Below, in pieces: positions 2,654-63,964 of a DNA stretch of 64,000 nucleotides. Where the stretch lies: positions 248,001-312,000 of IMG/VR virus record IMGVR_UViG_3300017991_000048; one strand, 5' to 3'. Within the stretch, counting starts at the first letter, position 1, and each line of letters begins with the position of its first letter. A program made the position numbers and the translations under genes. The notes below the pieces were generated by a model. It was not told the origin of the DNA, did no database searches, and saw nothing but the letters and a program-made list of their open reading frames with translations.

Positions 2654-2674
2654 TTTGCTCTCCGCTCCACAAAT

Positions 2675-3193: not shown

Positions 3194-3197
3194 TAGA

Positions 3198-3554: not shown

Positions 3555-3651
3555 TCTCCAAACAAAACGCCAATACGGTAAACCCTATACAGACTAGAAC
3601 GCAGGTTTCAACCAATAGCTAACCTCCGACTCACCGTTTCACGTGAAACAC

Positions 3652-15905: not shown

Positions 15906-15915
15906 ACGATTCTCC

Positions 15916-20939: not shown

Positions 20940-20948
20940 TACAGTCTC

Positions 20949-23990: not shown

Positions 23991-23993
23991 TGT

Positions 23994-24452
23994 CTACCTC
24001 GCGCTCAACCCTACATCCTGTTGTTGCCACTCAATGGCTTTCAAAAGCTTCTCCGCTCTCGGTGCAAAAGCTGTCTTGAGTTTCCGCAAGCTGTCTCCGT
24101 AATCCCCCGTCTTGAGGTCGAAATCTCGGTTGAATTTTCTCATCACAGCGTTGTTATTATTCCTTACCTCTGACCAAGGCCCTAAAGTCTGAAAAAGTAT
24201 ACTCATGGTTCTTGGGGTTATCTCAATATAAAAACGTCCTGTCTTGCTTCTAAGGTCTGTGCTCCAGACATCATAATCTCTGCTCCAACCCGCAACATCG
24301 ACCTTCCAATCATGTCCTAACTTTCGCGCCACATCCTCTACTGTTACTTTAAATCTGTCGTGTAAGCTTATACCTTCAGTAAATTCTTCATCGTAATAAA
24401 AGCCCGTCTTGGCTTGATAACGATCAACTACCCTGTCATTCATCCCAACCAT
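23994..24452 (-). CDS. Hypothetical protein with RVVDRYQAKTG leader
   Basis: 152 aa; probable start ATG 24443. Confidence 0.7.
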   Translation of the reverse strand: MVGMNDRVVDRYQAKTGFYYDEEFTEGISLHDRFKVTVEDVARKLGHDWKVDVAGWSRDYDVWSTDLRSKTGRFYIEITPRTMSILFQTLGPWSEVRNNNNAVMRKFNRDFDLKTGDYGDSLRKLKTAFAPRAEKLLKAIEWQQQDVGLSAR

Positions 24453-25191
24453 ATTTACAATACCGCTCCAGGGTGTCGCCCGTTACAGGGCACGAAATTG
24501 CGTCCAGAACCTGGAAATAACAATCCTCTTCCACTACAGGATCATTATAGGTTCTTTGATAACACCAGCGGACCATCCAAAGCCCCGGCTGGCCGCATTC
24601 CCCGGCTGTCCCGGTTACGTAATAACAGCCAAGTTTATGCTTGGCTGGTCGCTGGTTGCCCGGTCCTATTTGCTCCAGGGCACATCCGGGCTGCATCTGG
24701 TACATTGTGTAGCCTACGGCCTCAGGGTCGTAAGGTTTGCCACTGCCATCTATGACCGAATAAATCAGGTCGCCCCATGTAAATATATGACCCCACCGGA
24801 AACCCACCGATACTACCGGAGCCTCGCAAATTGGCGGCGGAACATGGACAACATCCATGTAGGCTGTAACAACGGCAACCCCATAAATTGGGTCGTATTC
24901 CGAGAAATTCAGATGCCCCTCACCGTGGGTCTGACCCCGAACACCGACTCTCCGGAGCAAATCGGCTGTAACATTGCTCCCGCCGTCAGCTATGCCAGCG
25001 ATATCAGCTATGCTGTCATCGATCAAATCCCCCGCTCCGGTCACATGACCAGAGACATAAAAGACCCCGATTGTACTCCCGCCTACATTTGCTGCCCCAA
25101 CAATGGGATCAACGATATTATGAATCAGCGTAACCGAGCCGTTTACGCTCGCTGCACCTGTCGTTGTTCCGTCAATGTCATAAAGAGGCAT
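24436..25191 (-). CDS. Putative minor virion protein: Gly/Ala/Val beta-repeats plus Ig-like domain
   Basis: GAANVGG/GIADGG-type repeats; C-domain (FRWGHIF..GDL...GCYYV...GLWMVRWCY) similar to the N-domain of 18686..19606. Confidence 0.55.
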   Translation of the reverse strand: MPLYDIDGTTTGAASVNGSVTLIHNIVDPIVGAANVGGSTIGVFYVSGHVTGAGDLIDDSIADIAGIADGGSNVTADLLRRVGVRGQTHGEGHLNFSEYDPIYGVAVVTAYMDVVHVPPPICEAPVVSVGFRWGHIFTWGDLIYSVIDGSGKPYDPEAVGYTMYQMQPGCALEQIGPGNQRPAKHKLGCYYVTGTAGECGQPGLWMVRWCYQRTYNDPVVEEDCYFQVLDAISCPVTGDTLERYCKYGWDE

Positions 25192-25203
25192 TCCATCTCG
25201 ATC

Positions 25204-25476
25204 CTACAACTTATTTACGCTGGCCTTTAACTTAGCCGGGGTGAAATGGCCTTTATTATCAGCCCATACAATGTGGATAACATTGTTTTCGCCCACACCT
25301 ATAAAAAGGCCCATTGCCCCTCCGACAGCCGTAACTAAGGTTCCCGCAGTAATATCCCCCTGGCCTTTATACCTCTTGACCCCTTGCTGTTTGGCAAGTT
25401 GCTTGTCGAGAGTGTCCTTCAGTCCTGCGACTTTCTGAGCGCCCAGAGCCTGTTCAAATGCTTTACGAGGGTTCAT
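25204..25476 (-). CDS. Small protein with NPRKAFEQALGAQKVA leader
   Basis: 90-aa ORF, GGAG SD. Confidence 0.7.
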   Translation of the reverse strand: MNPRKAFEQALGAQKVAGLKDTLDKQLAKQQGVKRYKGQGDITAGTLVTAVGGAMGLFIGVGENNVIHIVWADNKGHFTPAKLKASVNKL

Positions 25477-25490
25477 GCCAAACTCCTATT

Positions 25491-25874
25491 CTAAATAATG
25501 CCGAAAACAAGCATCCAGGACGGAGCCCCATCTGGCCCGATGCCGTCCGGTTCAACTCTTTTGCCAGTAACGGACTTGGCAACACCGTCAAACATCCACT
25601 TCTCCATTACTCTTATCGACGGAGGTCTGGAAATACCAGAGACGTAGTTATGTAAATTTTCCGTGTGTACGGTGACCATATTACCAGCATCGTCCGTGAG
25701 TTCCGTTCGGGCTCCTGAACGACCGGGCCAACTCAAACTAACCCTGGACCCGCTCTCAATCGAATCGCCTCTTTTGTTCGCAACGTCTCTTTTAAGCCTG
25801 TAAGAACGGGCCTCAACGATTCTTTCGTGGGCCTGTTTGTTTATGGCTTCTTCAAATGCTTTACGAGGGTTCAT
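25491..25874 (-). CDS. Protein with NPRKAFEEAINKQA leader
   Basis: 127-aa ORF. Confidence 0.7.
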   Translation of the reverse strand: MNPRKAFEEAINKQAHERIVEARSYRLKRDVANKRGDSIESGSRVSLSWPGRSGARTELTDDAGNMVTVHTENLHNYVSGISRPPSIRVMEKWMFDGVAKSVTGKRVEPDGIGPDGAPSWMLVFGII

Positions 25875-25875
25875 T

Positions 25876-26259
25876 TTAGGTCTCCTGGACTATCAGTTGT
25901 CCTGCGGGGAATCTAACTTGATCTGAGGCCAGAATCAGCCGTGGTGTGCTCAGAGTGCCGTAATACATCATGTTACCACCGGCACTCGCATCCAAAAGAG
26001 CAAAAGCCTCGATGGTTCCCCACGTTGCCGTGGCAACCGGGAACAGTATCTCGCCCGTGTTTGACGACTGTCCGTTAACAGGGACCGTGACCGTCACTAA
26101 CTGCCGCCCATACCCGCCACCAGAAACCTCAGTGCCACCACCAGCAGGGGTGGGAGTCGCTGTATAGAGCGCCACGTAAACCAGCGCGGGAGACGTATAC
26201 GGGGTGTTCCGGAGAGCCGCGTTTACGAAGTTGTCACTGAGATAATATGTCTTTGGCAT
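25876..26259 (-). CDS. Minor tail/fibre-associated protein, paralogue of 28063..28449
   Basis: VYVALYT..PT...GTEVSGGGYGRQ...FPVATATWGT...GNMMYYG pattern. Confidence 0.7.
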   Translation of the reverse strand: MPKTYYLSDNFVNAALRNTPYTSPALVYVALYTATPTPAGGGTEVSGGGYGRQLVTVTVPVNGQSSNTGEILFPVATATWGTIEAFALLDASAGGNMMYYGTLSTPRLILASDQVRFPAGQLIVQET

Positions 26260-26267
26260 TTAGACCC

Positions 26268-26894
26268 TCACATCCAGAATTTCTTATCCGATAGCTCCAC
26301 TCCCGGCATCCGTTGAGCTTTCGCTTTCAATACCTGTGCCTTGCCAGGACCGATTCGCCCTGACCAGCGGTAACCTATTCTTACGGTTCCAGAGTAATCT
26401 GTTCCGTTGCAGTTGAGCCTTCCGGGTCTCAAATCCGTAAAGTCTGGACCCACTACGAGAGCATTGGCAATTTTCCGGACAACCTTGACCGCATCATCTA
26501 TCCGCCGTTTCGCGTCGGCGGGGTCCATACCGGCAGACGCGATAGTTATGTTTGTCCAGAAGTAAGCGCCGTCTTTGTCCGCGTACATCACAACATCTGG
26601 AAAAGTCTCACCAAGAGTTATGGCTTGCTTTTTCAGGGTTTCTTCAAATGCTTTTCTGGGGTTAGCCGCCATGCCTTCGCTCTCCATTTTCTCAAGACGA
26701 GTATAATAATCAGACAATTCTGCAAGATGGTCTTTGGCTATCTCTTTTGCGATTGCCGGGTCGTCTGTGTGCTCCTTCTCAACCTCGATCCCCATCTCAA
26801 GTTGCTCTTTATCAAACTTGTCATCAGGGACATCAGTGTGCTTGCCCACGCCTTCTTTTTGTAACGCTTCTTCGTAAGCTCTGCGAGGGTCCAT
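26268..26894 (-). CDS. DUF5661-like domain protein with two leader motifs
   Basis: FDKEQLEMGIEVEKEHTDDPAIAKEIAKDHLAELSDYYTRL recalled as DUF5661; N-terminal DPRRAYEEAL and internal MAANPRKAFEETLKKQA. Confidence 0.7.
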   Translation of the reverse strand: MDPRRAYEEALQKEGVGKHTDVPDDKFDKEQLEMGIEVEKEHTDDPAIAKEIAKDHLAELSDYYTRLEKMESEGMAANPRKAFEETLKKQAITLGETFPDVVMYADKDGAYFWTNITIASAGMDPADAKRRIDDAVKVVRKIANALVVGPDFTDLRPGRLNCNGTDYSGTVRIGYRWSGRIGPGKAQVLKAKAQRMPGVELSDKKFWM

Positions 26895-50379: not shown

Positions 50380-50922
50380 TTATGGCAACGGTAAGGGCTT
50401 GGTGCCTTTAAACCCTGTACCCGGTAAAGAGCCTGCAATGGCATCTTGCTCTTCCTTGGACCAACTCCCAGCGCCTGGACGCTTACCCGCGTACACGGTA
50501 AAGAGTGCAAACAACCCGTTCCGGTTTGCCACTACTTTGGTATTACCCGAAGCAGATAACAGACCTTTTTGGTCCATTTGGGCCTTAAGTTCACGCCAAA
50601 CTCCTCCAAGAACTCTCTCTGCCTTCCGTAAACTACCAATAGTAGTACTAAAAGCCAAGCCAGCGTTCGGATAATCACCAACGTCATCAATTAGAACCCA
50701 TCCTGTTATACCCTTCGTACCAAGCGAAGCGTAAGGACCATCTAAAGAAGCAGTTTTCCAGTGGTTATGACGATTTTCCTCATCGCTGTATCCGGTGACT
50801 ATTGCTTGTTTTTCTGTCTTGCCCTCATCCTTGTCCTCGGATTTTTCCTTCATCTTCTTTTGCTGTTCCAAGAACTCAGGGGGAACCTTCTTCTTTGCGG
50901 CTTTCCAACGATTCTGATCCAT
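50380..50922 (-). CDS. Protein with MDQNRWKAA leader, KKKVPPEFLEQQKKMKEK module and internal NHWKTA
   Basis: 180-aa ORF, AAGGAG SD. Confidence 0.75.
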   Translation of the reverse strand: MDQNRWKAAKKKVPPEFLEQQKKMKEKSEDKDEGKTEKQAIVTGYSDEENRHNHWKTASLDGPYASLGTKGITGWVLIDDVGDYPNAGLAFSTTIGSLRKAERVLGGVWRELKAQMDQKGLLSASGNTKVVANRNGLFALFTVYAGKRPGAGSWSKEEQDAIAGSLPGTGFKGTKPLPLP

Positions 50923-50932
50923 GGTTCTCTCC

Positions 50933-51541
50933 TTAGCGGTCTACGCCAATATCTGAAATAAGCTTGTAAATCAAATCTTTCTGGCCGTTAGTGAACTTCC
51001 ACCTGACGTTCACGTTCTTGTCAGCCCAATCTTTTGGACTGCTTTTCTTTTCTTCTGACATGGCAAGCCAGTCAGCACACATCTCTGCAATATCCAGGTC
51101 TAACATCTTGGTAGCGTCCACCATTTCAGACGGCGGCTTGTCCCTGTCGTCGCGGTTTATCAAATCCACTTTCTTACTACAATGGAACTCAGGGTGGTGG
51201 CGGTTGTTCTTGACGTGGTGTTGCGTTGCCTCATTCATCTTGTCTTCGATACCATCAGGGGCATCGAACTTCTTACCATCGTCCTGGCACTTGTACTGCC
51301 ATGTGATCCAGATGTAAGGATCGATTTCAGGCTTCTTGAGCTTACTTTGGTCGTGGTCCTTGCCCTGTTCAACCAAACCCTTGAACTTCTTGGGGTCGTA
51401 CTTCTCAATCTTCTGACAATACTTCTGCACCCGCTCGATATGTTCACTGGTTCTCTTGTCAAACCAGTCCTTCATCTCCTGGGTAGGTTCGGTATCGGCA
51501 CGTAAGAATCGCGCCACTACGCGTCGAGCTGAAACGGTCAT
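50933..51541 (-). CDS. HD-superfamily hydrolase (DUF5662-like) with RRVVARFLRA leader
   Basis: HIERVQ, HDQSK, HHVKNNRHHPEFH, EMCADW. Confidence 0.75.
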   Translation of the reverse strand: MTVSARRVVARFLRADTEPTQEMKDWFDKRTSEHIERVQKYCQKIEKYDPKKFKGLVEQGKDHDQSKLKKPEIDPYIWITWQYKCQDDGKKFDAPDGIEDKMNEATQHHVKNNRHHPEFHCSKKVDLINRDDRDKPPSEMVDATKMLDLDIAEMCADWLAMSEEKKSSPKDWADKNVNVRWKFTNGQKDLIYKLISDIGVDR

Positions 51542-51547
51542 TTGTCC

Positions 51548-52012
51548 CTAATACTTTGGAGCTAACTCAGCCATCCGACGTATGAACCTGCGGGTAGCTG
51601 ATCTCCATGGTGCCAAATCCCTTACCTCTAACTCGTCACCAACATCATAGTCTAATAGCTCCTCCACTTCGTGTATGATCTCTCGCTCGACGTGATCCAC
51701 CAAACGATCTACATGACCAGAAGGTATGGTGCCTGCTGTCTTTGCGGCCAACGATCGTGGTCCATAACCTTTCTGAGGGCCGAGACGGTTAATTTGATTC
51801 TTTAGGATGCCCATCCACCTTATCACTTCATCAGCGGAAGTAAGCACCTCTTCAGGTTCGAACCTTGAGGCACCAAGCTCTTCATCTATGTACTTCAAAA
51901 GCTTTTTGACCTCACGAAGCTTTTGTTGAGCTTTCATATATTCGGCTCTCGTCACAGGGCTGCGCGAATAGGTGCCCACGGGAACAGCGGTCTTCCAACG
52001 GTTATGATCCAT
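51548..52012 (-). CDS. Two-module protein with MDHNRWKTA leader
   Basis: 154 aa; internal AKTAG. Confidence 0.7.
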   Translation of the reverse strand: MDHNRWKTAVPVGTYSRSPVTRAEYMKAQQKLREVKKLLKYIDEELGASRFEPEEVLTSADEVIRWMGILKNQINRLGPQKGYGPRSLAAKTAGTIPSGHVDRLVDHVEREIIHEVEELLDYDVGDELEVRDLAPWRSATRRFIRRMAELAPKY

Positions 52013-52021
52013 GATTCTCTC

Positions 52022-52651
52022 CTAATGTCCGTAGCCCCAGGCAGTCTGGTACTTGGGTTTGCCGTCCCACTTATAGGCGTGGCTGTAGCTTGTAAGCCTT
52101 ACAGAGTGGCCCGGTGACACCCGCTTGCGTTTGGGCGGTCCAGTGTATCTGCCCGGAACAGCCACCACATAATCCGCGCCTTCTGCTCTCCTGGCAACCT
52201 TCTGAGCTATCTCGCGGATCTCAATCTGTTTTGCTCCCGCGAGTCTCGTTACCTCATAAAAATCTACGTTGGTCTGGTCGTAGCCCCATGCAGAGTAAAG
52301 AATGTCTCCAACATTAAACTCGTGCTTGAACTCCCGCCGTTCCTTCTTTCTTCTTTCCTTTTCCTCCAAGGTTCTTCTGCGTCCGTCAGCCGAGTCTTCA
52401 ATATGTTTCTCGCGTTGGGCTTCGCTGCGGAAAGAATAGTGGTATAGAGGCTTCTGTGACTTACCCTGAAAAGCTATGGCAACATACTTGGGTCTGCCGT
52501 TCCGGTCCTCACCGTCATACTGATAAACCACCTGATCAGTGCCTCTGGGAACGTAAGGTTTCTGATCTCTGACCTCTTTGGGCAGATAGAAATCACGGGG
52601 CATTACCACCCGTGGACGGTAAGCTGTTTTGCGGTGGTCGTAAGAATACAT
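52022..52651 (-). CDS. Protein with YSYDHRKTA leader; WGYDQTNVDFY domain
   Basis: C-domain paralogous to 54493..54828. Confidence 0.75.
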   Translation of the reverse strand: MYSYDHRKTAYRPRVVMPRDFYLPKEVRDQKPYVPRGTDQVVYQYDGEDRNGRPKYVAIAFQGKSQKPLYHYSFRSEAQREKHIEDSADGRRRTLEEKERRKKERREFKHEFNVGDILYSAWGYDQTNVDFYEVTRLAGAKQIEIREIAQKVARRAEGADYVVAVPGRYTGPPKRKRVSPGHSVRLTSYSHAYKWDGKPKYQTAWGYGH

Positions 52652-52663
52652 TTCAGAGCCTTT

Positions 52664-53176
52664 CTACTCTTCAGATACCAAATCATCCACCAGGAATACG
52701 CTGACACGATCCCCCACCTGTTTTACACGGGTCTCGGCAAACTTTTCTAACCCTCGCGCCATGGCCATCATGGTTTCGTAGTATTTTTCGCGATCACGAT
52801 TATCTCGCACACCTACCGCAATCGTCTTCCTGCCCCTCCAATCCTCATTGAAATCAGTCCAGATCTTTAACTCTCTGTCAACAACCGGGAACAGGTGCTT
52901 CATCCACGCCAAGGCGTTATCCACGTGAGGTACTCGCCACGGCTCCGGAGTATAACCCGGAGCAACTCGTGCAGGAGTGGCCCAGGTGAAAGGTCGAAAA
53001 CGTGCTGGAAGCCTATCATAGATGCTTCTGGGATTTCTAGGCCCCAGAGCGACACGGCTCGCAAGGTCATTTAAATCAGATGCCAGCCTCTCCCGGCTTG
53101 GTTGGTCAGACTCACAATAAGCCACAAGGCGTCGGAGTTCATCTTGAAGGTCTTGGGGGTTAGCTATTTTTTTCAT
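52664..53176 (-). CDS. Protein with KKIANPQDL...PSRERLASDL...RVA N-terminal module
   Basis: 170-aa ORF, GAGG SD. Confidence 0.7.
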   Translation of the reverse strand: MKKIANPQDLQDELRRLVAYCESDQPSRERLASDLNDLASRVALGPRNPRSIYDRLPARFRPFTWATPARVAPGYTPEPWRVPHVDNALAWMKHLFPVVDRELKIWTDFNEDWRGRKTIAVGVRDNRDREKYYETMMAMARGLEKFAETRVKQVGDRVSVFLVDDLVSEE

Positions 53177-53190
53177 GTTCTTTGCCTCTC

Positions 53191-53754
53191 TTACTCATAA
53201 TATGCCAAGGCGTTATGATCCCCGGCGGCGTCAGTGATCAGTCCTTTTGCATCAGCTAAAACTTTAATCTCTAGTTCAGCAGACTCAATAGCATCCTCTA
53301 TCTGAGTAATTAACTCATTGGCGAGTTCATATCTTTCATCCTCAGACCTAGTTTTGTCCAAAGCATTGAAGTACGCCTTTGCCGCTTTTTCCAAGGGTTG
53401 ATTTTCATCTAAAAACTGCCTTCGCGCTATCGACCTAGCGATGTTATAAGCTTTGCGACGGACAGCAATATTGGGTTCTTCGGCAGCAGTTTTTTTGCTC
53501 TTCTGCTTTGACAAGAACTGAGGTGGTATTTTGCCTTTGCCTTTGCTGTCGCCGCCCTTCTTCTCATCTTTGTCGCTGTTGCCCTTGGCCTTTTCCTTCA
53601 TCTTCTTCTGCTGTTCCAAGAACTCAGGCGGAACCTTCTTCTTTGCGTATCGTTTGACAACACGTTCTGCTAATTTTGACATTAGAATTTTTCTCCAGCT
53701 ATTTTCTATGCAGTCCGATCTCCAGATGGGTCCACTCATCAACGTAGTCAACAT
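53191..53754 (-). CDS. Protein with ERVVKRYA leader and KKKVPPEFLEQQKKMKEK module
   Basis: Probable start ATG 53682 (MSKLAERVV) after GGAG. Confidence 0.72.
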   Translation of the reverse strand: MLTTLMSGPIWRSDCIENSWRKILMSKLAERVVKRYAKKKVPPEFLEQQKKMKEKAKGNSDKDEKKGGDSKGKGKIPPQFLSKQKSKKTAAEEPNIAVRRKAYNIARSIARRQFLDENQPLEKAAKAYFNALDKTRSEDERYELANELITQIEDAIESAELEIKVLADAKGLITDAAGDHNALAYYE

Positions 53755-54463
53755 CTACCCTAACAGTATCGCGGCCAAATTCCTTAATGACAGCCTGAGC
53801 CAGCGTATTCGCTTCTCTCAGATCCTCTCGACCAGGAGCATCATCTCCCATGTCACCGTGCTCTCTGGTGGAGTAAAACAAGTGCTTGGGACTCTCATCC
53901 TCCAAATCCATCCAGGTACGCTGTTTCTTGATAAAATCTTTGACATCCTTGATGGAGACTTCGCCCCCACGAGTGCCTTTCTTGGGGCCACCTAAAGCGA
54001 AAAGCAGAGCTTCAGGGGTAATCTTTGCCAAGACCTTTTTGATATCCCGGACCGTGGGCACTCTCTCAGACTTAACGGTATGCGCTGGATAAGCACCGCC
54101 AGTGGGTGGCACCCACAACTGCACCTCCCAAGTTGGCTCTTTTAGAATCCATCTTCCAGGAGTAACGTAATCCCCTCTTACTGCACGATGGTTCATCCGT
54201 CCAGAAATGGACATGATCTTATGCCCGTCAACTTCAATATCCTGCTCAAAACCCACATGGGAAGTGGGAATCCCATATATATTTTCTGGGGGATAGGCGA
54301 CCTTAAAGCCCTCTGGGAGCATAGTGAGTAAGATCTTACCTGCTCGCCTCGCGGTGCCTTTGGCGGTTTTGAACTCGCGCCCGTATAGCTCTATAGCGTC
54401 CCGGACCATCGACTCTTTTTTTGGTCTAGGGGTGGCAAAGCGTCTGTCGTAGCTGTAGTTCAT
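53699..54463 (-). CDS. Protein with NYSYDRRFA leader
   Basis: 254-aa ORF. Confidence 0.72.
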   Translation of the reverse strand: MNYSYDRRFATPRPKKESMVRDAIELYGREFKTAKGTARRAGKILLTMLPEGFKVAYPPENIYGIPTSHVGFEQDIEVDGHKIMSISGRMNHRAVRGDYVTPGRWILKEPTWEVQLWVPPTGGAYPAHTVKSERVPTVRDIKKVLAKITPEALLFALGGPKKGTRGGEVSIKDVKDFIKKQRTWMDLEDESPKHLFYSTREHGDMGDDAPGREDLREANTLAQAVIKEFGRDTVRVDVDYVDEWTHLEIGLHRK

Positions 54464-54492
54464 AACCCTGTCTTAGTAAGTGGATGAAAAGA

Positions 54493-54828
54493 TCAGTGGC
54501 CGTATAGCTTGCTGGTCTGGAACTTTGGTCTTCTGTCCCACTTTCGGGCGTAAACATTAGAGTCTATTTTGACAGTGCCATCCGGGGTAACCCGCTTACG
54601 CATGGGCTTGGAATTGCGAGCAAATCGGCCAATCATGGGTCTGATGAAAAACCCGTTCTTTGTCTGCCTGACGGTCTTTTGCGCGAGCGCCTGGATCTCG
54701 ACTTGGGGTTCTCCAAGGGTTCTGAGGATCTGATAGAAATCAACGTTGGAATCCTCATAGCCCCAGGACGCGAAGAGGACGTCTCCGGGGATGAGATTGT
54801 GAGCTATTTTCCATCGGAGGTGGTCCAC
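54493..54828 (-). CDS. Protein with MDHLRWKIA leader; WGYEDSNVDFY domain
   Basis: Paralogue of the C-domain of 52022..52651. Confidence 0.72.
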   Translation of the reverse strand: MDHLRWKIAHNLIPGDVLFASWGYEDSNVDFYQILRTLGEPQVEIQALAQKTVRQTKNGFFIRPMIGRFARNSKPMRKRVTPDGTVKIDSNVYARKWDRRPKFQTSKLYGH

Positions 54829-57833: not shown

Positions 57834-58712
57834 CTAAACACGAGTGACAACAATACGGGTCAATCCGCGAGGATTGAAGGCACCGATACCCAGGTTCTCA
57901 AAACAACTGAAACCAATTGTCCGAGCCTTTGGATCGTCAGCCGACAGAACAGTGATCTCGGTACGAACCGGGATACGACCGAACTGCTCAGGCTCACAGC
58001 AAACATACGCGAAGCCTGACGGAACCAGCCTGGATGTGATGATCTGAGCACCCCAAAGAACAGCCTGTAGGCCGGTCTTGAGCAGGGTAGCCTGACTCTC
58101 GATATCCAGAATGTCACGTCCGAACTTACGGATGTCAGCGTAATCCGTTGCATTCATGTAGATCCGCGCAACCCGAAGGTCATGCCTCTCTATTTCTGCA
58201 AAGGCGTCAGCCAGTACTGCCGGTGAAATCGGAGCTACCACCGGTACATCGGGATTGGTCTGCCCAGGCAGCGTGTCGAAACCTGAAACAGCAATGCTGT
58301 CCAGAATCGCGAATACACGCTCATCCTCAGCCGCCTGAATCTGAGCCTTGGCCAAATCCTGGGCACGTTCGATCAGATCGAAACGACGCTCCTTGATCTG
58401 GGTCAGGGGGATTTCAGGGTTCGAGGCAATCTCAAACAAGGGGAAGATCACGCGACGTGGCTTCTGAATGGCAAGAATATTCTCACCCTCTTCGCCCACG
58501 ACAAATGCGGTCACGTCCGGGTCCTTGTCGTAGATAGGCAGAGCACCATCGGGAAGCTGCTCGACCAGGAAGGTCTTACGACCGACTGCCGAGTAGTCAC
58601 GACGAAGACGGAGCGGCTGAATCATGGAAGCGGCGAGCTTCGCACGACCGGCTGCGGTCTTGATGTACTCAGAAATAACCTGCTGCTTGACTTGATTTGA
58701 TACTTGTCCCAT
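57834..58712 (-). CDS. Major capsid protein (HK97-like fold)
   Basis: 292 aa after protease, scaffold and decoration genes, followed by a strong terminator; FEIASNPEI...IERAQDLAKAQIQAAEDERVF backbone-helix pattern; N-terminal YIKTAA. Confidence 0.8.
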   Translation of the reverse strand: MGQVSNQVKQQVISEYIKTAAGRAKLAASMIQPLRLRRDYSAVGRKTFLVEQLPDGALPIYDKDPDVTAFVVGEEGENILAIQKPRRVIFPLFEIASNPEIPLTQIKERRFDLIERAQDLAKAQIQAAEDERVFAILDSIAVSGFDTLPGQTNPDVPVVAPISPAVLADAFAEIERHDLRVARIYMNATDYADIRKFGRDILDIESQATLLKTGLQAVLWGAQIITSRLVPSGFAYVCCEPEQFGRIPVRTEITVLSADDPKARTIGFSCFENLGIGAFNPRGLTRIVVTRV

Positions 58713-58720: not shown

Positions 58721-59359
58721 CTAGACCCTCATGTCAAGCACGAGCAGCGAACTGTTAGCATCTGGAGCAACTTTGACCACGCCGATCAGGGTCACGAACT
58801 CAATCGCATTTTGACCCGGAACATTGTACTCATAAGCGTCCGCGAGAACGTTGGTGACGTAGCCGTTGGCTGAACACCACAGCTTGTCCCCCGTTGCGTA
58901 TGTGATGGGAGTGCCAGCACTCTTGCCCAGTAGGATCTTTGTCTCGTAAATATCGAGTCCTACACAAGAGCCGCTGCCGCAAACATAGGGTCCGCGTCCC
59001 GAAGCCACACCCGGCGTATTCTCAAAGGGGTTGCCCAGGCTATCATTCAGAAAGATACCCAGAGGCAGATAACCAGGAGCATATGCAGCACCCGGCTGGA
59101 TAGGTCCACCGATATAGTTGTTGCCTATGTCGGGGCGAGTGAACGCAATCGAGGCACCAAGAACACCTTTCTTGGTAATACCTGAGAGCGTTGTAGAAAC
59201 GGTCGCGGCAGCGGTGACAATTGCGGGATTATCTTGCGTGAACGCATCCGGTGTCAGAAGACCCACAGAGTTGCGGGTCACGACATGGAGGAGTTGCACT
59301 CGTCCTGATGTCTCCCGAAAATCACCCGAACTTTGACCGCCGATAGCGTATGAAGTCAT
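58721..59359 (-). CDS. Putative capsid decoration/cement protein
   Basis: 212 aa, G/A/T-rich beta protein directly upstream of the major capsid gene; PLGIF...SG......G..V.L..YET. Confidence 0.55.
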   Translation of the reverse strand: MTSYAIGGQSSGDFRETSGRVQLLHVVTRNSVGLLTPDAFTQDNPAIVTAAATVSTTLSGITKKGVLGASIAFTRPDIGNNYIGGPIQPGAAYAPGYLPLGIFLNDSLGNPFENTPGVASGRGPYVCGSGSCVGLDIYETKILLGKSAGTPITYATGDKLWCSANGYVTNVLADAYEYNVPGQNAIEFVTLIGVVKVAPDANSSLLVLDMRV

Positions 59360-59466: not shown

Positions 59467-60666
59467 CTACTTGATGCCGAAAACGTCGCGGACGTCAGGA
59501 GCCGACTTCCAAAGACTGGACAGTTGATCAATGCCGTCCTGACCAGCCGATGAAGAAGCGCCACCCAACTTGGACACGCCCTCAGAAGGACGGGTTCCAA
59601 CAGTCCGAGTCGAAGCTGTGCGGGTCGAAGCCTGCTTTTGCTGCTTCTGTTGCTGTTGGCCCTTCTCCTGATCCTGGCCTTCCTTCTCTTCGTCCTTGTC
59701 CTGCTGATCCTCAGCAAACAACTGACGCAGAACTGCATCCTCAGGACCAAGGTCGTTATTGGAGATGTCCATCTGAGGCGGCTCCATCTGGATATCCGTC
59801 TCAGCGGTCTGGCAACGGCCAAGCACGTCATCAAGATCCTCATCCATGACCACCTGCTCATCCATCACGTCCATAACCTGCTGACCCTGCTGTTGCTGCA
59901 ACGCCTGATCAATCATCTCCTGGACTTGCTGACCAACCTGCTGGATCTGCTCATCCTGAATCTGCTGTTGGGCCTGCTGTTGCTGGTCCTGTTGCTCCTG
60001 ATCCTGTTGGACCTGTTGCTGAACCTGATCCTGCTGAACCTGCTGTTGCTGCTGCTGTTGCTGGTCCTGCTGAGCCTGCTGGATCATCTCCTGAACCTGC
60101 TGTTGGGCAGCGCCATAGTTGCCGGTCTGAATCTGCTGAACTACCTGCTCAGCCATCGCCGTCATATCCACAGCCTGCTTTTCCTGGCCCTCATCCTTGT
60201 CCTCATCAGCATCTTCATCCTCACCGGCAAGACGCTTATGAGTGTCAATCAACTCCTGATCCGGAAGATGCATCAGAGCGACAGCCTGATCTTCGATCAT
60301 GTCCTCTGTCACAGATGCATGTTTGCCCTGATCAAGCAGCCTCTTGGCAACATCGATACAAAGATCCGCCTTCTTGAGCAGAATCTCTTTCGATGCTGTC
60401 TTTTCAGGATGGTTGAAAGTGTCACCCCTCATGTCAGGCATCCCGATCTCATTACGCCGGGTTTCTCCGCCTGAGTACTCAGACTCCCATGTGTTAGGTG
60501 AATGCACATCTTCAGCAAATGCCGAAGGGTCACCTATAACATAGGCGTCCGCAGGGGGTTGCGGATGGTCTTGGTTCATAGTGTAAGGATCTGCCACCTT
60601 CTTTAGAGCAGCAGCCTTTTCCATAACCTCTTCTCGATTCCAGGTAGAACGCTCACGCATTGGCAT
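59467..60666 (-). CDS. Capsid scaffold protein (Q/E/D-rich coiled coil)
   Basis: Located between protease and capsid genes; long poly-Q/QD stretches; many K/R-x-A motifs (KVA, KTAS, KHAS, KQA, KQASTRTAS). Confidence 0.7.
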   Translation of the reverse strand: MPMRERSTWNREEVMEKAAALKKVADPYTMNQDHPQPPADAYVIGDPSAFAEDVHSPNTWESEYSGGETRRNEIGMPDMRGDTFNHPEKTASKEILLKKADLCIDVAKRLLDQGKHASVTEDMIEDQAVALMHLPDQELIDTHKRLAGEDEDADEDKDEGQEKQAVDMTAMAEQVVQQIQTGNYGAAQQQVQEMIQQAQQDQQQQQQQQVQQDQVQQQVQQDQEQQDQQQQAQQQIQDEQIQQVGQQVQEMIDQALQQQQGQQVMDVMDEQVVMDEDLDDVLGRCQTAETDIQMEPPQMDISNNDLGPEDAVLRQLFAEDQQDKDEEKEGQDQEKGQQQQKQQKQASTRTASTRTVGTRPSEGVSKLGGASSSAGQDGIDQLSSLWKSAPDVRDVFGIK

Positions 60667-60710
60667 ATCCTTTGTGGGTTATTGTCCTTGTGGTTATATA
60701 GAAGGATTTT

Positions 60711-62219
60711 TTACGACCGTCCCAAGCTAAATAATCGGCCTTTTTCTAACAAACTGGCAGTTTCACTCCCTGTTAGCTTCCGACCAAGAACTTGACGACA
60801 AGCCGCCAAATATGACTCTACATCTTCATATGGGCCTGTTCCTCCTACATCAAGAACAGTCCTATAAACTCTTGTTTCACCAGCCATAAGTGCTTTCTTA
60901 TTCATTAAATCAAGCATTCGGGATACGGCCAAAATGTTCCGACCTGTAAATCCTGCCTTTTTAACTAATGGCCAACCACCACGCTTGTGTAAGATCAAGC
61001 CGTGAAAAACTTTCCTAGCATCTGCTTTTCCAATAAAAGAAACTACTAATTTAGCAATCCGCTGCCACTCAGGGTGCTTCATGGCGGATCGAATTAAAGT
61101 CTCATTTTGCTGATTAGGGTCTATAGCCCGGATGCTATCTACTTCTTTCTGACCGATTTCTTTTCTAATGTTTTCAATGGCTTGGTTACGCAGAGCATCT
61201 GTTAGATCAGTGATAGCTTTCTGAACCGGGTTCTCTTCTTCAGGTTCTGCTGGAGCCGTTTCTTCGCCTTCATCCTCAGTTTCAAACTGTTGTTCAGGCT
61301 CCTGTCCCTGTCCCTGGCTTTGCTCTTGCTGGCCCCATCCCTGGAAAGCCGCTCTGGACATCATGTTAGGATCAGCCACTGGAGCCGGTTGGCCCAAAGC
61401 TACTCGCATCTTACCTTCAAGCCCTTGAAGCTCTTCTGCCGTAAGAATATTTCTCAGAACAGCGCCCTTGAAAGCTGGATTGGCAACCCAAGATGCCTCG
61501 ATAAACTTTACGGAGTCAGGATCGGTATAATGGCCGCATAACTCCGCAATAATGCGTTCAACGCCAAGGTCATCCCTGAACTTGCTTCCTTTAAAGAACC
61601 GGACGCACTGACAGAGTTGTGCTTCATCCTGTGCTACATTTCCACACTTTGTACACGTTGTGGTAGCTGTAGAGCATCCCATGGATAGGGTGCCGAGCTT
61701 CCCGGTCTTGATAGCCCTAATCAGGGGCGCATGTTTAAGATCATTCGCAATCAGAATGTCAATGTATATGGATTCCCCGACATCCCTGGCAGCGGCGTCG
61801 ATAATCCGACCCTTAGAAAGCTCCGGAATCTGAACATGCTCAACGTAAGATTGCGCTCCGACAAAGGTCTTGAAACTTCCCAACAGGAGCCTTCGCTCGA
61901 AAGCATCGTTATTATTGTTAACGAACTGAGCGGTCTTGGGCGTAATGTAATAATCGCTATACTTACGATCAACCTCGAAACCCTCTACAAAATGCCGACC
62001 CATGGGAGCAGAAGCTTCGTCCACGTCCACGGAAGCCACAATCGTTGCGTGGCTGAGCATATATTTGGACGGGTCATACTCCTGAAGGATGATCCGGGCG
62101 GTCTTCTTCTGAAAATCCGGGGCAGGACTCAAGGCCCCACGACGCACAGCATCCCATTCCGCGAATTCAATTCCCGGTTTTTGTAAGGTTGCTTTTGCGT
62201 ATTTAAGAAATGCCATCAA
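60711..62219 (-). CDS. Putative prohead (maturation) protease, assemblin/HK97-like
   Basis: Candidate catalytic His (SYVEHVQ) and Ser (GTLSMGC), E.S.VANPAF strand, CxxC insert, position before the scaffold. Confidence 0.7.
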   Translation of the reverse strand: MMAFLKYAKATLQKPGIEFAEWDAVRRGALSPAPDFQKKTARIILQEYDPSKYMLSHATIVASVDVDEASAPMGRHFVEGFEVDRKYSDYYITPKTAQFVNNNNDAFERRLLLGSFKTFVGAQSYVEHVQIPELSKGRIIDAAARDVGESIYIDILIANDLKHAPLIRAIKTGKLGTLSMGCSTATTTCTKCGNVAQDEAQLCQCVRFFKGSKFRDDLGVERIIAELCGHYTDPDSVKFIEASWVANPAFKGAVLRNILTAEELQGLEGKMRVALGQPAPVADPNMMSRAAFQGWGQQEQSQGQGQEPEQQFETEDEGEETAPAEPEEENPVQKAITDLTDALRNQAIENIRKEIGQKEVDSIRAIDPNQQNETLIRSAMKHPEWQRIAKLVVSFIGKADARKVFHGLILHKRGGWPLVKKAGFTGRNILAVSRMLDLMNKKALMAGETRVYRTVLDVGGTGPYEDVESYLAACRQVLGRKLTGSETASLLEKGRLFSLGRS

Positions 62220-62225: not shown

Positions 62226-62471
62226 TCAGCGTTCAGCTTTCCTTATTAAATCAAGCATCTCATCAGTGCTTTCATAAAGAGCTTCCAGCTTTCCTTGTGT
62301 GTACGCCATTTGCCTCTTGTAGTCGCTTTTTGAAATGACCCCTGGTGTTCTAAGACGATCCTCTTGTCCCTCAATCTGTCTCTTCAAGACCTTAGAGTTC
62401 CACTCAAGTTTTCTTTTTATTTCTTCCAAAACAAGATGTTGATGAGCAGCGTAGCGGCGGTCATAAGTCAT
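62226..62471 (-). CDS. Small protein with MTYDRRYAA leader
   Basis: 81-aa ORF, AGGTG SD. Confidence 0.7.
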   Translation of the reverse strand: MTYDRRYAAHQHLVLEEIKRKLEWNSKVLKRQIEGQEDRLRTPGVISKSDYKRQMAYTQGKLEALYESTDEMLDLIRKAER

Positions 62472-62479
62472 AACATCAC

Positions 62480-62758
62480 CTAAAACTTCATACTCAACGT
62501 GCGTCCGATTTGATCTAATATCTTTGCCGTCTCTTTCGGGTCGTGGAAGCTCTTTATTCTGCGGACATTCTTAATCTCTATCCAGACAGCACGGTCGTTC
62601 TGAGACGGGCTAAACTCAATATCAAAGGCTCCCATACTGGCCTTACCCACCTGACGCCTTGGATCATACTTCACATTACGCCAACGTTTTTTGAGTTCAG
62701 CCGCAAACGCCGCACCCTCATCGCCCTGCTCAAAGCCGTAGCGTCGATCGTAGGTCAT
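62480..62758 (-). CDS. Small protein with MTYDRRYG leader
   Basis: 92-aa ORF. Confidence 0.7.
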   Translation of the reverse strand: MTYDRRYGFEQGDEGAAFAAELKKRWRNVKYDPRRQVGKASMGAFDIEFSPSQNDRAVWIEIKNVRRIKSFHDPKETAKILDQIGRTLSMKF

Positions 62759-63502: not shown

Positions 63503-63964
63503 CTATGGGGCGAGCGGACGACCGTTCTCGGACTTCCCATGATGCACACCGGAAGAGTCGTCATTTCCGTATGCGCTCATGTACGGCTCATCGGCTTCCG
63601 TCTGAATCGGAGAGGACGGATTGCTGTATGTATTCATATACGGCTCATCCGCGTCTCGCTGAATCACCTCAGCCGTCTTGTCCGCCTTATCTTCATCCTC
63701 GTCAGCGGTCTTTTCAATAATCTGGGCCTGCCTGACGGTAAGAGAATCCTCACCATAAGCAGCCTGCTCCAGGTCATCAGCAACTCGATCAATTTCATTC
63801 ACGAGTTCCTTGGCATGATCAAAGTCCATACCCCATTTTTCGTGACCTTCTTGAACCGTGGATGCGATACGATCCAACCGGGCAAGAATTCGATCGGCGG
63901 TTTTGGTGTCAAACTCAACTTTTTCGGACATCTCATTCCTCGCTGTTTTTGCTGTGGTTAACAA
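63503..63964 (-). CDS. Acidic hypothetical protein with two ADEPYM repeats; may extend beyond the window
   Basis: Same frame is open from 64000 (RLAGEEDPQDETLLTTAKTA...); KTA motifs. Confidence 0.7.
   Translation of the reverse strand: MLTTAKTARNEMSEKVEFDTKTADRILARLDRIASTVQEGHEKWGMDFDHAKELVNEIDRVADDLEQAAYGEDSLTVRQAQIIEKTADEDEDKADKTAEVIQRDADEPYMNTYSNPSSPIQTEADEPYMSAYGNDDSSGVHHGKSENGRPLAP

What the first reader, a model, noticed from the sequence alone, without database searches (positions are those of the whole stretch)
59467..62219. K/R-x-A(S) as the probable recognition site of the encoded prohead protease
The scaffold (KKVA, EKTAS, KHAS, EKQA, KQASTRTAS), capsid protein (YIKTAA) and protease (KKTA) carry the same tripeptide that closes the cargo leaders, often with Ser at P1'. 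Established: herpesvirus assemblin, which shares a fold with HK97-type prohead proteases, cleaves after Ala in V/L-x-A|S, whereas T4 gp21 and phiKZ gp175 cleave after Glu. An Ala-P1, basic-P3 specificity would be distinct from those phage enzymes. The cleavage itself is inferred.
Basis: inference. Interest (0 to 1): 0.6.

Follow-up and report, generated by a model that had tools for sequence, protein, structure and literature searches.

The report
Lys-x-Ala cut site of a megaphage head protease
A 398-kb phage related to Bacillus phage G marks its scaffold, its head protease and about thirty leader-bearing "cargo" proteins with the same short motif (Lys/Arg-x-Ala, most often Lys-Thr-Ala), which is very probably where its head-maturation protease cuts; this differs from the Glu-specific cutting known from T4 and phiKZ-like giant phages, but no cleavage has been measured.

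Summary
All quoted motifs are at the stated places. In the scaffold (59467-60666, minus strand), [KR]xA occurs 10 times against 2.8 expected. The excess is specific to that spacing.

KTA is the most over-represented non-repeat tripeptide in the window: 29 against 5.8 expected. Its density is 1.1-2.1 per 1000 aa in the window and 0.15-0.3 over most of the rest of the 398-kb genome.

Four unrelated families of short N-terminal leaders all end in K/R-x-(A, rarely G or S). Internal leader copies are preceded by the same motif.

A blind scan of 1200 residue-pair patterns put KxA first in the scaffold-like proteins of distant relatives (phage G, Tunturi_5, Myrna, LR745208). The same scan put IxE and LxE first in T4, whose motif is known from experiment.

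The 502-aa protein is the only head protease found in the genome. It has a T4 gp21/herpesvirus-protease-like fold and an invariant His and Ser. Conserved K/R-x-A sites lie in the predicted disordered linkers on both sides of its catalytic domain.

Three points stay open:
- The bond that is cut is inferred, not shown.
- The capsid-protein site is uncertain.
- The Ser preference at P1' holds only in the scaffold.

Verdict: a new variant of a known kind, supported by sequence analysis only.

The parts
60711..62219 (-). Head-maturation (prohead) protease, 502 aa. The database copy starts one codon later and has 501 aa.
   Evidence: phrog_18299 'head maturation protease' 2.5e-9 and phrog_2774 4.5e-21. 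It is the only hit to phrog_18299 in the 398-kb genome, and no ClpP, S78, S49 or S77 was found. The AF2 model aligns to T4 gp21 (5jbl, Z 7.5, rmsd 4.0, 130 aligned) and to herpesvirus proteases (Z 5.5-6.8), which fill the top 17 rows.
61392..62081 (-). Catalytic domain, about aa 47-276, with the putative catalytic His128 (61836-61838, in SYVEH) and Ser179 (61683-61685, in TLSMG).
   Evidence: The structural matches span model residues 46-259/274. His and Ser are invariant in 55 homologues of 52-76% identity. They come in the order His then Ser, 51 residues apart; T4 gp21 has His85 and Ser140, 55 apart (sequence read).
62097..62105 (-). K39-T40-A41 of the protease, a putative N-terminal self-cleavage site.
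   Evidence: [RK]-[TA]-[AS] is kept in 49-50 of 55 homologues. It lies in a segment with pLDDT under 50 (27-46), just before the domain.
61347..61355 (-). R289-A290-A291 of the protease, a putative site that would free the catalytic domain from the C-terminal helical domain.
   Evidence: K/R-A-A is kept in 54 of 55 homologues. It lies in a disordered linker, pLDDT under 50 over 285-328.
59467..60666 (-). Scaffold-like protein, 399 aa, with a Gln-rich centre and ten [KR]xA sites.
   Evidence: It sits between the protease and the capsid gene and matches no family. [KR]xA 10 against 2.75, P<0.001, spacing-specific. KxA is the top non-polyQ pattern in the blind scan.
60391..60405 (-). EKTAS (aa 88-92), the best-conserved scaffold site.
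   Evidence: K89 and A91 are invariant in the alignment of four scaffolds that are 24-50% identical.
59611..59637 (-). KQAS-TRTAS (aa 344-352), a double site ahead of the conserved C-terminal tail.
   Evidence: A346 and R354 are invariant. The block KQASxRTASxRTVGTRP is conserved in three of four homologues beside a variable low-complexity region. Complex prediction placed this segment (330-399) on the protease domain with weak support only.
60592..60603 (-). KKVA (aa 22-25) of the scaffold.
   Evidence: Present. The aligned homologues have KKA or KTA here.
60313..60324 (-). KHAS (aa 115-118) of the scaffold.
   Evidence: Present. The homologues have KNAS, KAT or KAS, not strictly in register.
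60172..60183 (-). EKQA (aa 162-165) of the scaffold.
   Evidence: A165 is invariant, and KQA is kept in three of four homologues.
58721..59359 (-). 212-aa protein between the scaffold and capsid genes, probably a decoration protein. No site is predicted in it.
   Evidence: It holds the same position as phage G gp26 (annotated capsid decoration) and as its counterparts in L001, L005 and L006. Sequence similarity to gp26 is not significant. [KR]xA 2 against 1.1.
57834..58712 (-). Major capsid protein, 292 aa, with K18-T19-A20 (58653-58661) and K25-L26-A27 (58632-58640).
   Evidence: phrog_2522 1e-49. Matches phage G gp27 (PDB 6wkk) at 1e-63. Not enriched in [KR]xA. K25 and L26 are at least 90% conserved and A27 is invariant; K18 and A20 are below 90%.
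63503..63964 (-). 153-aa acidic protein upstream of the protease with four KTA, possibly a second core or scaffold protein.
   Evidence: KTA at aa 6, 21, 85 and 96. Homologues sit upstream of the protease in L005, L006 and L001. ID-[RK]-x-A-D is kept in the close relatives L005 and L006 but not in L001.
62226..62758 (-). Two small ORFs (81 and 92 aa) with the leader MTYDRR-Y-A/G (family c).
   Evidence: Predicted sites RYA|A (62448-62456) and RYG|F (62735-62743).
50380..54828 (-). Block of seven leader-bearing ORFs from families b (MD..RWK.A), c (YSYD[RH]R..A) and d (RVV.R[YF]).
   Evidence: Sites are listed: KAA|K, KTA|S, KTA|V, KIA|H, KTA|Y, RFA|T, RYA|K. ORFs 50380-50922 and 53191-53754 share a body that starts at the P1 Ala (AKKKVPPEF...) but carry different leaders.
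19774..26894 (-). Block with family a leaders (NPRKAFE.A[LI] then K.A) and two multi-unit proteins (327 and 1013 aa) with internal leader copies.
   Evidence: In the 327-aa protein the internal leader (MT-NPRKAFEEALE) is bracketed by KTA sites at aa 172-174 and 188-190. The 1013-aa protein has EKQA then SS-NPR, and PEKTA then F-NPR. Homologues of the 327-aa protein share only the unit that follows the internal leader.
288..3966 (-). Six further leader-bearing ORFs (families a, b and d).
   Evidence: Sites RVA|S, KVS|E, KTG|A, KTA|L, RKA|I and KVA|A.
15684..17367 (-). Two leader-bearing ORFs of family c (73 and 483 aa).
   Evidence: Sites KTA|Y (15870-15878) and RTA|G (17317-17325).

Best explanation
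The window carries the head-assembly module of a complete 398-kb phage related to Bacillus phage G. Its single serine prohead protease (assemblin/T4 gp21-like fold, His128 and Ser179) most likely recognises Lys/Arg at P3, any residue at P2 (Thr preferred) and Ala at P1 (rarely Gly or Ser), and cuts after that residue.

Proposed sequence of events:
1. Proteins destined for the capsid interior carry one of at least four unrelated short N-terminal leaders (8-20 aa). These act like T4 capsid-targeting sequences.
2. Each leader ends in the motif, so it is clipped off once the protease is activated inside the prohead.
3. The scaffold is cut at about ten such sites and leaves the shell.
4. Multi-unit cargo proteins are cut at internal leader junctions.
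5. The protease frees its own catalytic domain at conserved sites in the linkers on either side of it.

Shown: the motif, its statistics, its positions, its conservation and the protease fold. Inferred: that the motif is cleaved, that the bond after Ala is the one cut, that leader-bearing proteins are packaged, and that the capsid protein is trimmed.
For: 1. Spacing-specific enrichment in the scaffold: 10 against 2.8, z 4.7. Neighbouring spacings are about 1x.
2. KTA is 29 against 5.8 in the window. It is 4-9x enriched there and at background in the rest of the genome.
3. Thirty-one leader-linked sites in four unrelated leader families. P3 is K in 23 and R in 7. P2 is T in 11. P1 is A in 24, G in 4 and S in 3. 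The chance of [KR]xA within such a stretch is 0.14, giving a binomial tail of 3e-15. The sites are not independent within a family.
4. Unit boundaries coincide with the motif. Paralogues with different leaders share sequence from the P1 Ala onward. Internal leaders are bracketed by KTA/KQA. Homologues share only the unit that follows the internal leader.
5. The motif columns are conserved islands in fast-evolving scaffolds. In the protease they lie in disordered linkers flanking the catalytic domain.
6. The signal follows the protease family. Tunturi_5 gp332 has 20 against 7.7 and gp328 25 against 13.2. The LR745208 scaffold has 21 against 10.3. The Myrna gp97 protease-scaffold fusion has 31 against 15.3. 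Phage G gp19 has 10 against 3.4. All are spacing-specific, and Glu motifs are never enriched. The head regions of these phages show it too. Phage G has its own leader family that ends in KTA, KKA or K.S.
7. In a blind scan of 1200 pair patterns, KxA ranks first (62 against 26.6, z 6.9) and RxA third in the relatives. IxE and LxE rank first in T4, where the motif is known from experiment (PMC12991175).
8. The genome holds only one head-protease homologue. Its fold and invariant His and Ser fit the family.
9. Complex prediction of protease 40-292 with scaffold 330-399 gave weak support: score 0.49, best control 0.13. That mark was reached by 58 of 80 solved complexes and 2 of 110 mismatched pairs. 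At 0.60 or under, only 7 of those 80 solved complexes passed, as did both mismatches. The runs share at least 32% of contacts and the partner's pLDDT is at least 39.
Against: - There are no proteomic, N-terminal sequencing or biochemical data for this phage or any relative that I could read.
- The phage G virion mass-spectrometry paper (Gonzalez et al. 2020) is not held. It may already report sites that agree or disagree.
- The capsid protein is not enriched, and its KTA is less conserved than the rest of its N-terminal arm. Phage G has LETEE there.
- Leader-linked sites were chosen with a [KR]x[AGS] pattern, so their P3 and P1 identities are partly circular. One family d leader (50933-51541) has only LRA.
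- Sites within a leader family are paralogous, not independent.
- The protease model is only moderate (pLDDT 68.8, and under 50 around the catalytic His). The S1 pocket could not be examined.
- hhalign against T4 gp21 was not significant.
- The complex prediction is weak and gave no contacts.
Confidence: 0.7

Rival explanations
1. The protease recognises the motif, but the cut bond lies elsewhere. It could fall directly after the Lys/Arg (HK97 gp4 cuts its capsid protein after a Lys, from my own knowledge), or only a minority of the sites may be used.
For: Nothing in the sequence fixes the bond. P3 basic and P1 Ala are equally conserved. The junction evidence fits a cut anywhere within or just after the tripeptide.
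Against: Internal leader copies begin 1-2 residues after the Ala, just as N-terminal leaders begin 0-2 residues after Met. A cut after Ala would therefore recreate native-like leader ends. Herpesvirus proteases share the fold and cut after Ala (established knowledge). [KR] followed directly by A is not enriched.
Confidence: 0.13
2. K/R-x-A is part of a docking or targeting element that binds the scaffold, portal or capsid interior. It is not cleaved, and the leaders stay on the mature proteins.
For: The leaders themselves are conserved beyond the tripeptide (NPRKAFE, RWK, YSYDRR, RVVxRY) and must bind something. No cleavage data exist.
Against: The motif is multiplied in low-complexity scaffold regions that share no other sequence between relatives. 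It flanks the protease's own domain in disordered linkers. T4 shows the same statistical signature, and there it is a cleavage motif.
Confidence: 0.08
3. A host protease or another, unrecognised phage protease cuts at the motif, not the encoded prohead protease.
For: Some phages (80alpha-like, from my own knowledge) use a host protease to trim capsid and scaffold proteins. The genome has about 570 ORFs, mostly uncharacterised.
Against: The motif enrichment follows the protease family across hosts as different as Lysinibacillus, Mycobacterium and Tunturiibacter (Acidobacteriota). The protease carries conserved copies at its own domain borders. No ClpP, S49, S77 or S78 homologue is in the genome.
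Confidence: 0.05
4. The pattern is a compositional or paralogy artefact with no function.
For: Leader families are paralogous, so the counts are inflated. Lys/Ala-rich helical proteins can produce periodic patterns.
Against: The excess is specific to the i,i+2 spacing. It is absent from the rest of the genome. It appears in four unrelated leader families and in scaffolds that cannot be aligned to each other. It ranks first of 1200 patterns in relatives.
Confidence: 0.03

Closest known systems
T4 gp21 prohead protease with capsid-targeting sequences (IPI-III, Alt) and the gp22/gp67/gp68 core
   Same: Both have a serine protease of the same fold (Z 7.5 to 5jbl). Both have short N-terminal leaders shared by otherwise unrelated proteins, each ending in the protease motif. 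In both, the same motif is multiplied in the scaffold and present in the protease itself. T4 gp22 has [LI]xE 16 against 5.7 and gp21 7 against 2.5. Literature: PMC7411985 and PMC12991175.
   Different: The motif is K/R-x-A, not I/L-x-E, and Glu motifs are not enriched here. There are at least four leader families rather than one. Internal leader copies give polyprotein-like cargo. The protease has a 210-aa C-terminal helical domain. Sequence similarity to gp21 is not detectable.
phiKZ gp175 and SPN3US gp245 proteases of giant phages (S/A/G-x-E and A-x-E)
   Same: A giant phage with many internal or ejection proteins that are trimmed at N-terminal propeptides. In SPN3US, motifs recur inside the propeptides (PMC10052503).
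   Different: P1 is Glu in those phages. [AGS]xE is not enriched in this scaffold (6 against 6.4) or in the relatives. The phage lineage is also different: the capsid protein is of the phage G type.
Herpesvirus assemblin (V/L-x-A|S at the M site; Y-V/L-K/Q-A|S at the R site; own knowledge)
   Same: The protease fold is shared (Z 5.5-6.8 to KSHV, HCMV, HSV-2 and PrV proteases). P1 would be Ala. In the scaffold, Ser follows in 4 of 10 sites.
   Different: P3 is basic here rather than hydrophobic. [LIV]xA is depleted in the scaffold (1 against 4.8). P1' is not constrained at leader sites. Any relationship is at the level of fold only.
Bacillus phage G (gp19 protease, gp27 capsid protein, PDB 6wkk), Tunturiibacter phage Tunturi_5 and cluster C mycobacteriophages (Myrna gp97)
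   Same: The capsid proteins (40%, 48% and about 28% identity) and the proteases (about 30-39% over the domain) are homologous. The same K/R-x-A enrichment is present. Phage G has leaders that end in KTA or KKA.
   Different: The leaders are of different families. The scaffolds cannot be aligned. In Myrna the protease and scaffold are fused. Phage G lacks K-x-A at the capsid-protein position that holds KTA here. I found no published cleavage motif for any of these phages in the papers I could read.

Membership tests
Serine prohead proteases of the assemblin/T4 gp21/HK97 gp4 fold | Fold similar to solved members. | tested here: met
   AF2 model (pLDDT 68.8; 70-86 over most of the domain). The top 17 VIA rows are T4 gp21 (Z 7.5, rmsd 4.0, 130 aligned) and herpesvirus proteases (Z 5.5-6.8) over residues 46-259/274. 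In Foldseek, 5jbl was the top hit at only E 0.0099. Z values under 8 are middling by the tool's own note. phrog_18299 at 2.5e-9 adds sequence support.
Serine prohead proteases of the assemblin/T4 gp21/HK97 gp4 fold | A catalytic His followed about 50-70 residues later by a catalytic Ser, both invariant. | tested here: met
   H128 (SYVEH) and S179 (TLSMG) are invariant in 55 homologues and 51 residues apart. T4 gp21 has His85 and Ser140 (read). A residue-level alignment to T4 was not obtained; hhalign was not significant.
Serine prohead proteases of the assemblin/T4 gp21/HK97 gp4 fold | The gene sits in the head module next to the scaffold and capsid genes. | tested here: met
   The order is protease, scaffold, 212-aa protein, capsid protein on the minus strand. 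Four relatives show the same order.
Serine prohead proteases of the assemblin/T4 gp21/HK97 gp4 fold | Proteolytic activity on head proteins. | not testable with these tools
   This needs the enzyme or virion proteomics.
T4-type capsid-targeting-sequence (CTS) system | A short N-terminal peptide shared by otherwise unrelated proteins. | tested here: met
   There are four leader families. For example, the 52022 and 53699 ORFs share only YSYD.R. The 50380 and 53191 ORFs share a body but carry different leaders.
T4-type capsid-targeting-sequence (CTS) system | The leader ends in the motif that is also multiplied in the scaffold. | tested here: met
   Thirty of 31 leader-linked sites have [KR]x[AGS], and 24 have [KR]xA. 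The scaffold has 10 against 2.8.
T4-type capsid-targeting-sequence (CTS) system | Leader-bearing proteins are packaged in the head and the leader is removed. | not testable with these tools
   No virion proteome is available for this phage, and the phage G data could not be read.
Glu-specific giant-phage proteases (T4 I/LxE, phiKZ S/A/G-x-E, SPN3US AxE) | A P1 Glu motif over-represented in the scaffold and propeptides. | tested here: not met
   In the scaffold [LIV]xE is 4 against 5.2 and [AGS]xE is 6 against 6.4. Neither is enriched in any relative. The T4 control is positive for [LI]xE.
Herpesvirus assemblin-type specificity (V/L-x-A|S) | Hydrophobic P3, Ala P1 and Ser P1'. | tested here: not met
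   P1 Ala fits. However, P3 is K/R and [LIV]xA is depleted in the scaffold (1 against 4.8). Ser at P1' is seen in the scaffold only.

The most novel reading that the evidence does not exclude
The whole protease family may share a Lys-x-Ala specificity. That family covers phage G, Tunturi_5, cluster C mycobacteriophages and well over a thousand uncultivated large phages. On this reading the specificity is coupled to interchangeable short leaders that work as a capsid 'postal code'. The packaged or ejected proteome of uncultivated megaphages could then be read from sequence alone, including polyproteins that are cut into units inside the head.
Probability: 0.5. Interest if true: 0.7.

Novelty: new variant of a known kind. 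Interest (0 to 1): 0.58.

Why it matters
Maturation by a prohead protease and leader-directed packaging are known from T4, phiKZ and SPN3US. All of those enzymes cut after Glu.

A basic-P3, Ala-P1 rule for the phage G, megaphage and cluster C mycobacteriophage family would be a distinct specificity on the same fold. It would be closer to the herpesvirus enzymes at P1.

It would give a simple sequence rule for two predictions in large phages that are almost all uncultivated:
- which of their many unknown proteins are loaded into the capsid, and probably injected into the host;
- where the mature proteins begin.

The rule can be tested directly in cultured relatives: phage G, Tunturi_5, Myrna and Bxz1-type phages.

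Tried and rejected
- Pfam gave nothing for the protease or the scaffold.
- A PDB sequence search gave nothing for the protease.
- hhalign of the protease family against T4 gp21 was not significant. Only a 26-residue stretch aligned, so the catalytic residues rest on invariance, order and spacing.
- The AF2 model of the capsid protein was poor (pLDDT 41). This was probably because the 46 aligned sequences are 86-98% identical. I therefore could not check whether residues 1-20 belong to the mature N-arm or whether 6wkk models them. No fold search was run on that model.
- The phage G capsid and mass-spectrometry paper (J Mol Biol 2020) is not held under its DOI or PMC id. The 2025 phage G paper has no supplements held as text and says nothing on cleavage sites. 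The phage G tail paper says nothing either.
- Literature searches for a published motif in phage G or cluster C phages found none.
- The idea that Ser at P1' is part of the motif was rejected outside the scaffold.
- The scaffold site LWKSAPD was rejected as a conserved site. W, P and D are invariant, but K and A are not.
- The similarity of the decoration protein to phage G gp26 is not significant by sequence.
- Only the nearest relative (LR745208) and three cultured relatives were inspected at genome level, 19-41 kb each. Their whole genomes were not scanned.


Full report
**What is there**

The window is bases 248001-312000 of a single 398,071-bp virus contig with direct terminal repeats, rated complete. 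All of its real genes lie on the minus strand.

The finding covers two ORFs:
- A 502-aa protein at 60711-62219. It matches PHROG families for head-maturation proteases (phrog_18299 at 2.5e-9, phrog_2774 at 4.5e-21).
- A 399-aa Gln-rich protein at 59467-60666 that matches no family. By its position and composition it is the scaffold.

Downstream come a 212-aa protein (58721-59359) and the major capsid protein (57834-58712). The capsid protein matches phrog_2522 at 1e-49 and phage G gp27 (PDB 6wkk) at 1e-63.

The relatives are as follows:
- The uncultured 485-kb phage LR745208: capsid protein 84% identical, protease 33%.
- Tunturiibacter phage Tunturi_5 (309 kb).
- Bacillus phage G (498 kb).
- Cluster C mycobacteriophages such as Myrna.
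- More than 2000 capsid-protein clusters and about 1400 protease clusters from metagenomes, on contigs up to 620 kb.

**Checking the observation**

Against shuffles of each protein:
- The scaffold has 10 [KR]xA against 2.75 expected (P<0.001), and 4 [KR]xAS against 0.12.
- The protease has 12 against 6.7 (P=0.027).
- The capsid protein has 3 against 3.7 and is not enriched.

The scaffold excess is specific to the one-residue spacing. [KR]A, [KR]xxA, [KR]xxxA and Ax[KR] are all near 1x. [KR]xS, [KR]xG, [DE]xA and [QN]xA are not enriched. [LIV]xA is depleted.

**The motif is sharper than K/R-x-A**

A scan of all tripeptides in the window proteome puts KTA at 29 against 5.8 expected (z about 9). 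Only a collagen-like repeat and the leader motif NPR rank higher. Within xTA, Lys is 3.4x enriched. Within KTx, Ala is 4.1x enriched. Both are 1.1x in the rest of the genome.

KTA density is 1.1-2.1 per 1000 aa across the window and 0.15-0.3 over most of the rest of the genome. Two blocks outside the window (100-120 kb and 140-160 kb) are mildly raised and also carry leader-bearing genes.

[KR]xA in the first 25 residues is 37 against 18.6 in the window and 116 against 105.7 elsewhere.

**Leaders**

About thirty ORFs of the window begin with one of four unrelated short leaders:
- Family a: (M)NPRKAFE.A[LI].
- Family b: MD..RWK.
- Family c: (M).YSYD[RH]R, or MTYDRR.
- Family d: ..RVV.R[YF].

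In 30 of 31 cases the leader core is followed within a few residues by [KR]x[AGS], and in 24 by [KR]xA. The background chance of [KR]xA in such a stretch is 0.14, which gives a binomial tail of 3e-15.

I chose the sites with that pattern, and members of one family are paralogues, so the P value overstates independence. Four unrelated leader families nevertheless converge on the same ending. At these sites P3 is K in 23 and R in 7. P2 is T in 11 and V in 5. P1 is A in 24, G in 4 and S in 3. P1' is mixed, with Ser in 4 of 31.

**Unit boundaries coincide with the motif**
- ORFs 50380-50922 and 53191-53754 have different leaders (families b and d). They become 82% identical exactly from the P1 Ala onward.
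- ORFs 52022-52651 and 53699-54463 share nothing but the leader.
- A 327-aa protein (19956-20939) has a second, internal copy of its own leader, bracketed by KTA on both sides. A 1013-aa protein (20949-23990) has three internal leader copies, two of them preceded by EKQA or PEKTA.
- Homologues of the 327-aa protein share only the unit after the internal leader. In one homologue the protein starts there.

This is how a polyprotein cut at K-x-A would look.

**Conservation**

Four scaffolds that are 24-50% identical share little in their central low-complexity part. They do keep islands at HPE-KTA-S (K89 and A91 invariant), KKA, xKQA and KQASxRTASxRTVGTRP. One quoted-type site, LWKSAPD, is not conserved as K-x-A.

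In 55 protease homologues (52-76% identical) the conserved [KR]x[AS] sites are as follows (ORF numbering):
- K-[YF]-A at aa 6-8: 53 of 55.
- [RK]-[TA]-[AS] at aa 39-41: 49-50 of 55.
- K/R-A-A at aa 289-291: 54 of 55.
- K/R-x-A at aa 377-379: 49 of 55.

The second and third lie in segments with pLDDT under 50, on either side of the catalytic domain. That is where self-processing sites would be expected.

**The protease**

The AF2 model is moderate: pLDDT 68.8 overall, 70-86 over most of the catalytic domain, and under 50 around the His loop. The C-terminal helical domain scores about 93. The top 17 structural alignments are T4 gp21 (Z 7.5, rmsd 4.0, 130 residues) and herpesvirus proteases (Z 5.5-6.8) over residues 46-259/274. 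Foldseek alone was weak, with 5jbl first at E 0.0099.

His128 and Ser179 are invariant and 51 residues apart. In T4 gp21, His85 and Ser140 are 55 apart. The genome has no ClpP, S49, S77 or S78 homologue and only this one hit to the head-protease PHROG.

**The signal follows the protease family**

Spacing-specific [KR]xA enrichment recurs in these proteins:
- Tunturi_5 gp332: 20 against 7.7.
- Tunturi_5 gp328: 25 against 13.2.
- The LR745208 scaffold: 21 against 10.3.
- Myrna gp97, a protease-scaffold fusion: 31 against 15.3.
- Phage G gp19: 10 against 3.4.
- Phage G gp21: 8 against 4.0.
- The scaffolds in loci L005 and L006.

Glu motifs are never enriched. The scaffold here and Tunturi_5 gp332 have no detectable sequence similarity, so the shared signal is not simple inheritance of sequence.

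The 40-kb head regions of phage G, LR745208 and Tunturi_5 show the excess as a whole (z 3.3-4.2). In phage G, KTA is 10 against 2.8. Phage G also has its own leader family (MKRLIKK... and ...RLKK...) that ends in KTA, KKA or K.S.

**Positive control and blind scan**

In T4 the motif I/L-x-E is known from experiment (PMC12991175). The same shuffle test gives [LI]xE 16 against 5.7 in scaffold gp22 and 7 against 2.5 in protease gp21, again spacing-specific.

A blind scan of all 1200 residue-pair patterns (gap 0, 1 or 2) gave these rankings:
- T4 core proteins: IxE and LxE first.
- Scaffold-like proteins of the distant relatives: KxA first (62 against 26.6, z 6.9) and RxA third.
- This scaffold: KxA is the top clearly supported pattern apart from poly-Gln (8 against 1.6, z 4.9). 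TxN scored slightly higher on only four occurrences.

**Docking**

Complex prediction was run on the protease domain (40-292) with the scaffold segment 330-399. It returned weak support: score 0.49, best control 0.13. That mark was reached by 58 of 80 solved complexes and 2 of 110 mismatched pairs. At 0.60 or under, only 7 of those 80 solved complexes passed, as did both mismatches. The runs agree in at least 32% of contacts, and the partner's pLDDT is at least 39. No contacts were given. I count this as a minor point.

**What remains uncertain**
- No cleavage has been observed.
- The cut bond is placed after Ala for three reasons. Internal leaders begin 1-2 residues after Ala, much as N-terminal leaders begin 0-2 residues after Met. 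Herpesvirus enzymes of the same fold cut after Ala. Lys or Arg directly followed by Ala is not enriched. A cut elsewhere in the motif is not excluded.
- The capsid-protein site is doubtful. The whole N-terminal arm is conserved, K18 and A20 less so than K25-L26-A27. Some close homologues read IMSSAG or IKTPAG at that place. Phage G reads LETEE there, with an R-V-A a few residues on. The capsid model was too poor to help.
- From memory, the abstract of the phage G capsid paper speaks of a protease 'responsible for processing gp27'. I could not read the paper. Whether a motif has already been published for phage G is therefore unknown to me.

**Comparison with known systems**

The system works like the T4 gp21 capsid-targeting-sequence arrangement and the phiKZ/SPN3US propeptide systems (PMC7411985, PMC10052503). 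It differs from them in four ways:
- The motif has a basic P3 and Ala at P1, not Glu at P1.
- There are several leader families.
- Some cargo is polyprotein-like, with internal leader copies.
- The phage lineage is different.

With herpesvirus assemblin it shares the fold and probably P1 Ala, but not the hydrophobic P3.

**Verdict**

I rate it a new variant of a known kind. My confidence is about 0.7 that K/R-x-A is the protease's recognition motif, and somewhat lower that the cut falls right after the Ala.

Noticed in passing
window 288-3966, 15684-17367, 19774-26894, 50380-54828, 62226-62758 (minus strand); also genome 93-155 kb and 365-386 kb: Four unrelated families of short N-terminal leaders sit on about 30 ORFs with otherwise unrelated bodies: NPRKAFE.A[LI], MD..RWK, YSYD[RH]R or MTYDRR, and RVV.R[YF]. 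Further copies lie outside the window.
   Followed up: partly
window 19956-20939 and 20949-23990 (minus strand): A 327-aa and a 1013-aa protein contain internal copies of the family a leader, bracketed by KTA/KQA, so they look like polyproteins. Homologues of the 327-aa protein share only the C-terminal unit (conserved TYETW...GDTDDRGW).
   Followed up: partly
window 63503-63964 (minus strand): A 153-aa acidic protein has four KTA and a repeated DEPYM motif. It is conserved upstream of the protease in relatives and may be a second core or scaffold protein.
   Followed up: partly
window 38112-44915 (minus strand): A 2267-aa protein with long collagen-like G-x-T triplet repeats ([12 protein letters not shown]) dominates the tripeptide statistics of the window.
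   Followed up: no
window 55426-57720 (minus strand): A 764-aa protein just downstream of the capsid gene carries an N-terminal CGNR-type zinc finger and a C-terminal N6/N4 DNA methylase domain. In relatives this slot holds a LAGLIDADG homing endonuclease (L005, L006). One contig has a 1574-aa protein that hits both the LAGLIDADG and methylase families.
   Followed up: no
protease homologues P0141, P0143, P0158, P0165; contig listed: Some relatives have a protease of 620-800 aa with Hint/intein domains (PF14890, PF05203, PF07591). This suggests an intein inserted in the prohead protease gene.
   Followed up: no
genome outside the window (G000:C1): The tripeptide WDH (37 against 2.8 expected), together with LWD and DHL, is the most over-represented in the whole proteome. 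This points to a large paralogous family or repeat with an LWDH motif outside the window.
   Followed up: no
L003 (phage G 3289-44131) and L001 (LR745208): Phage G has its own leader family (MKRLIKK... and ...SRLKK...) on at least eight ORFs near its head genes. LR745208 has two ORFs that start with the same roughly 30-aa leader, MTTLRSKLIRLAH..P.LRP.LLPLLKEA.
   Followed up: partly
window 62216-62219: The protease ORF can start at TTG 62219 or at the adjacent ATG 62216. The public protein collection holds the 501-aa form.
   Followed up: no
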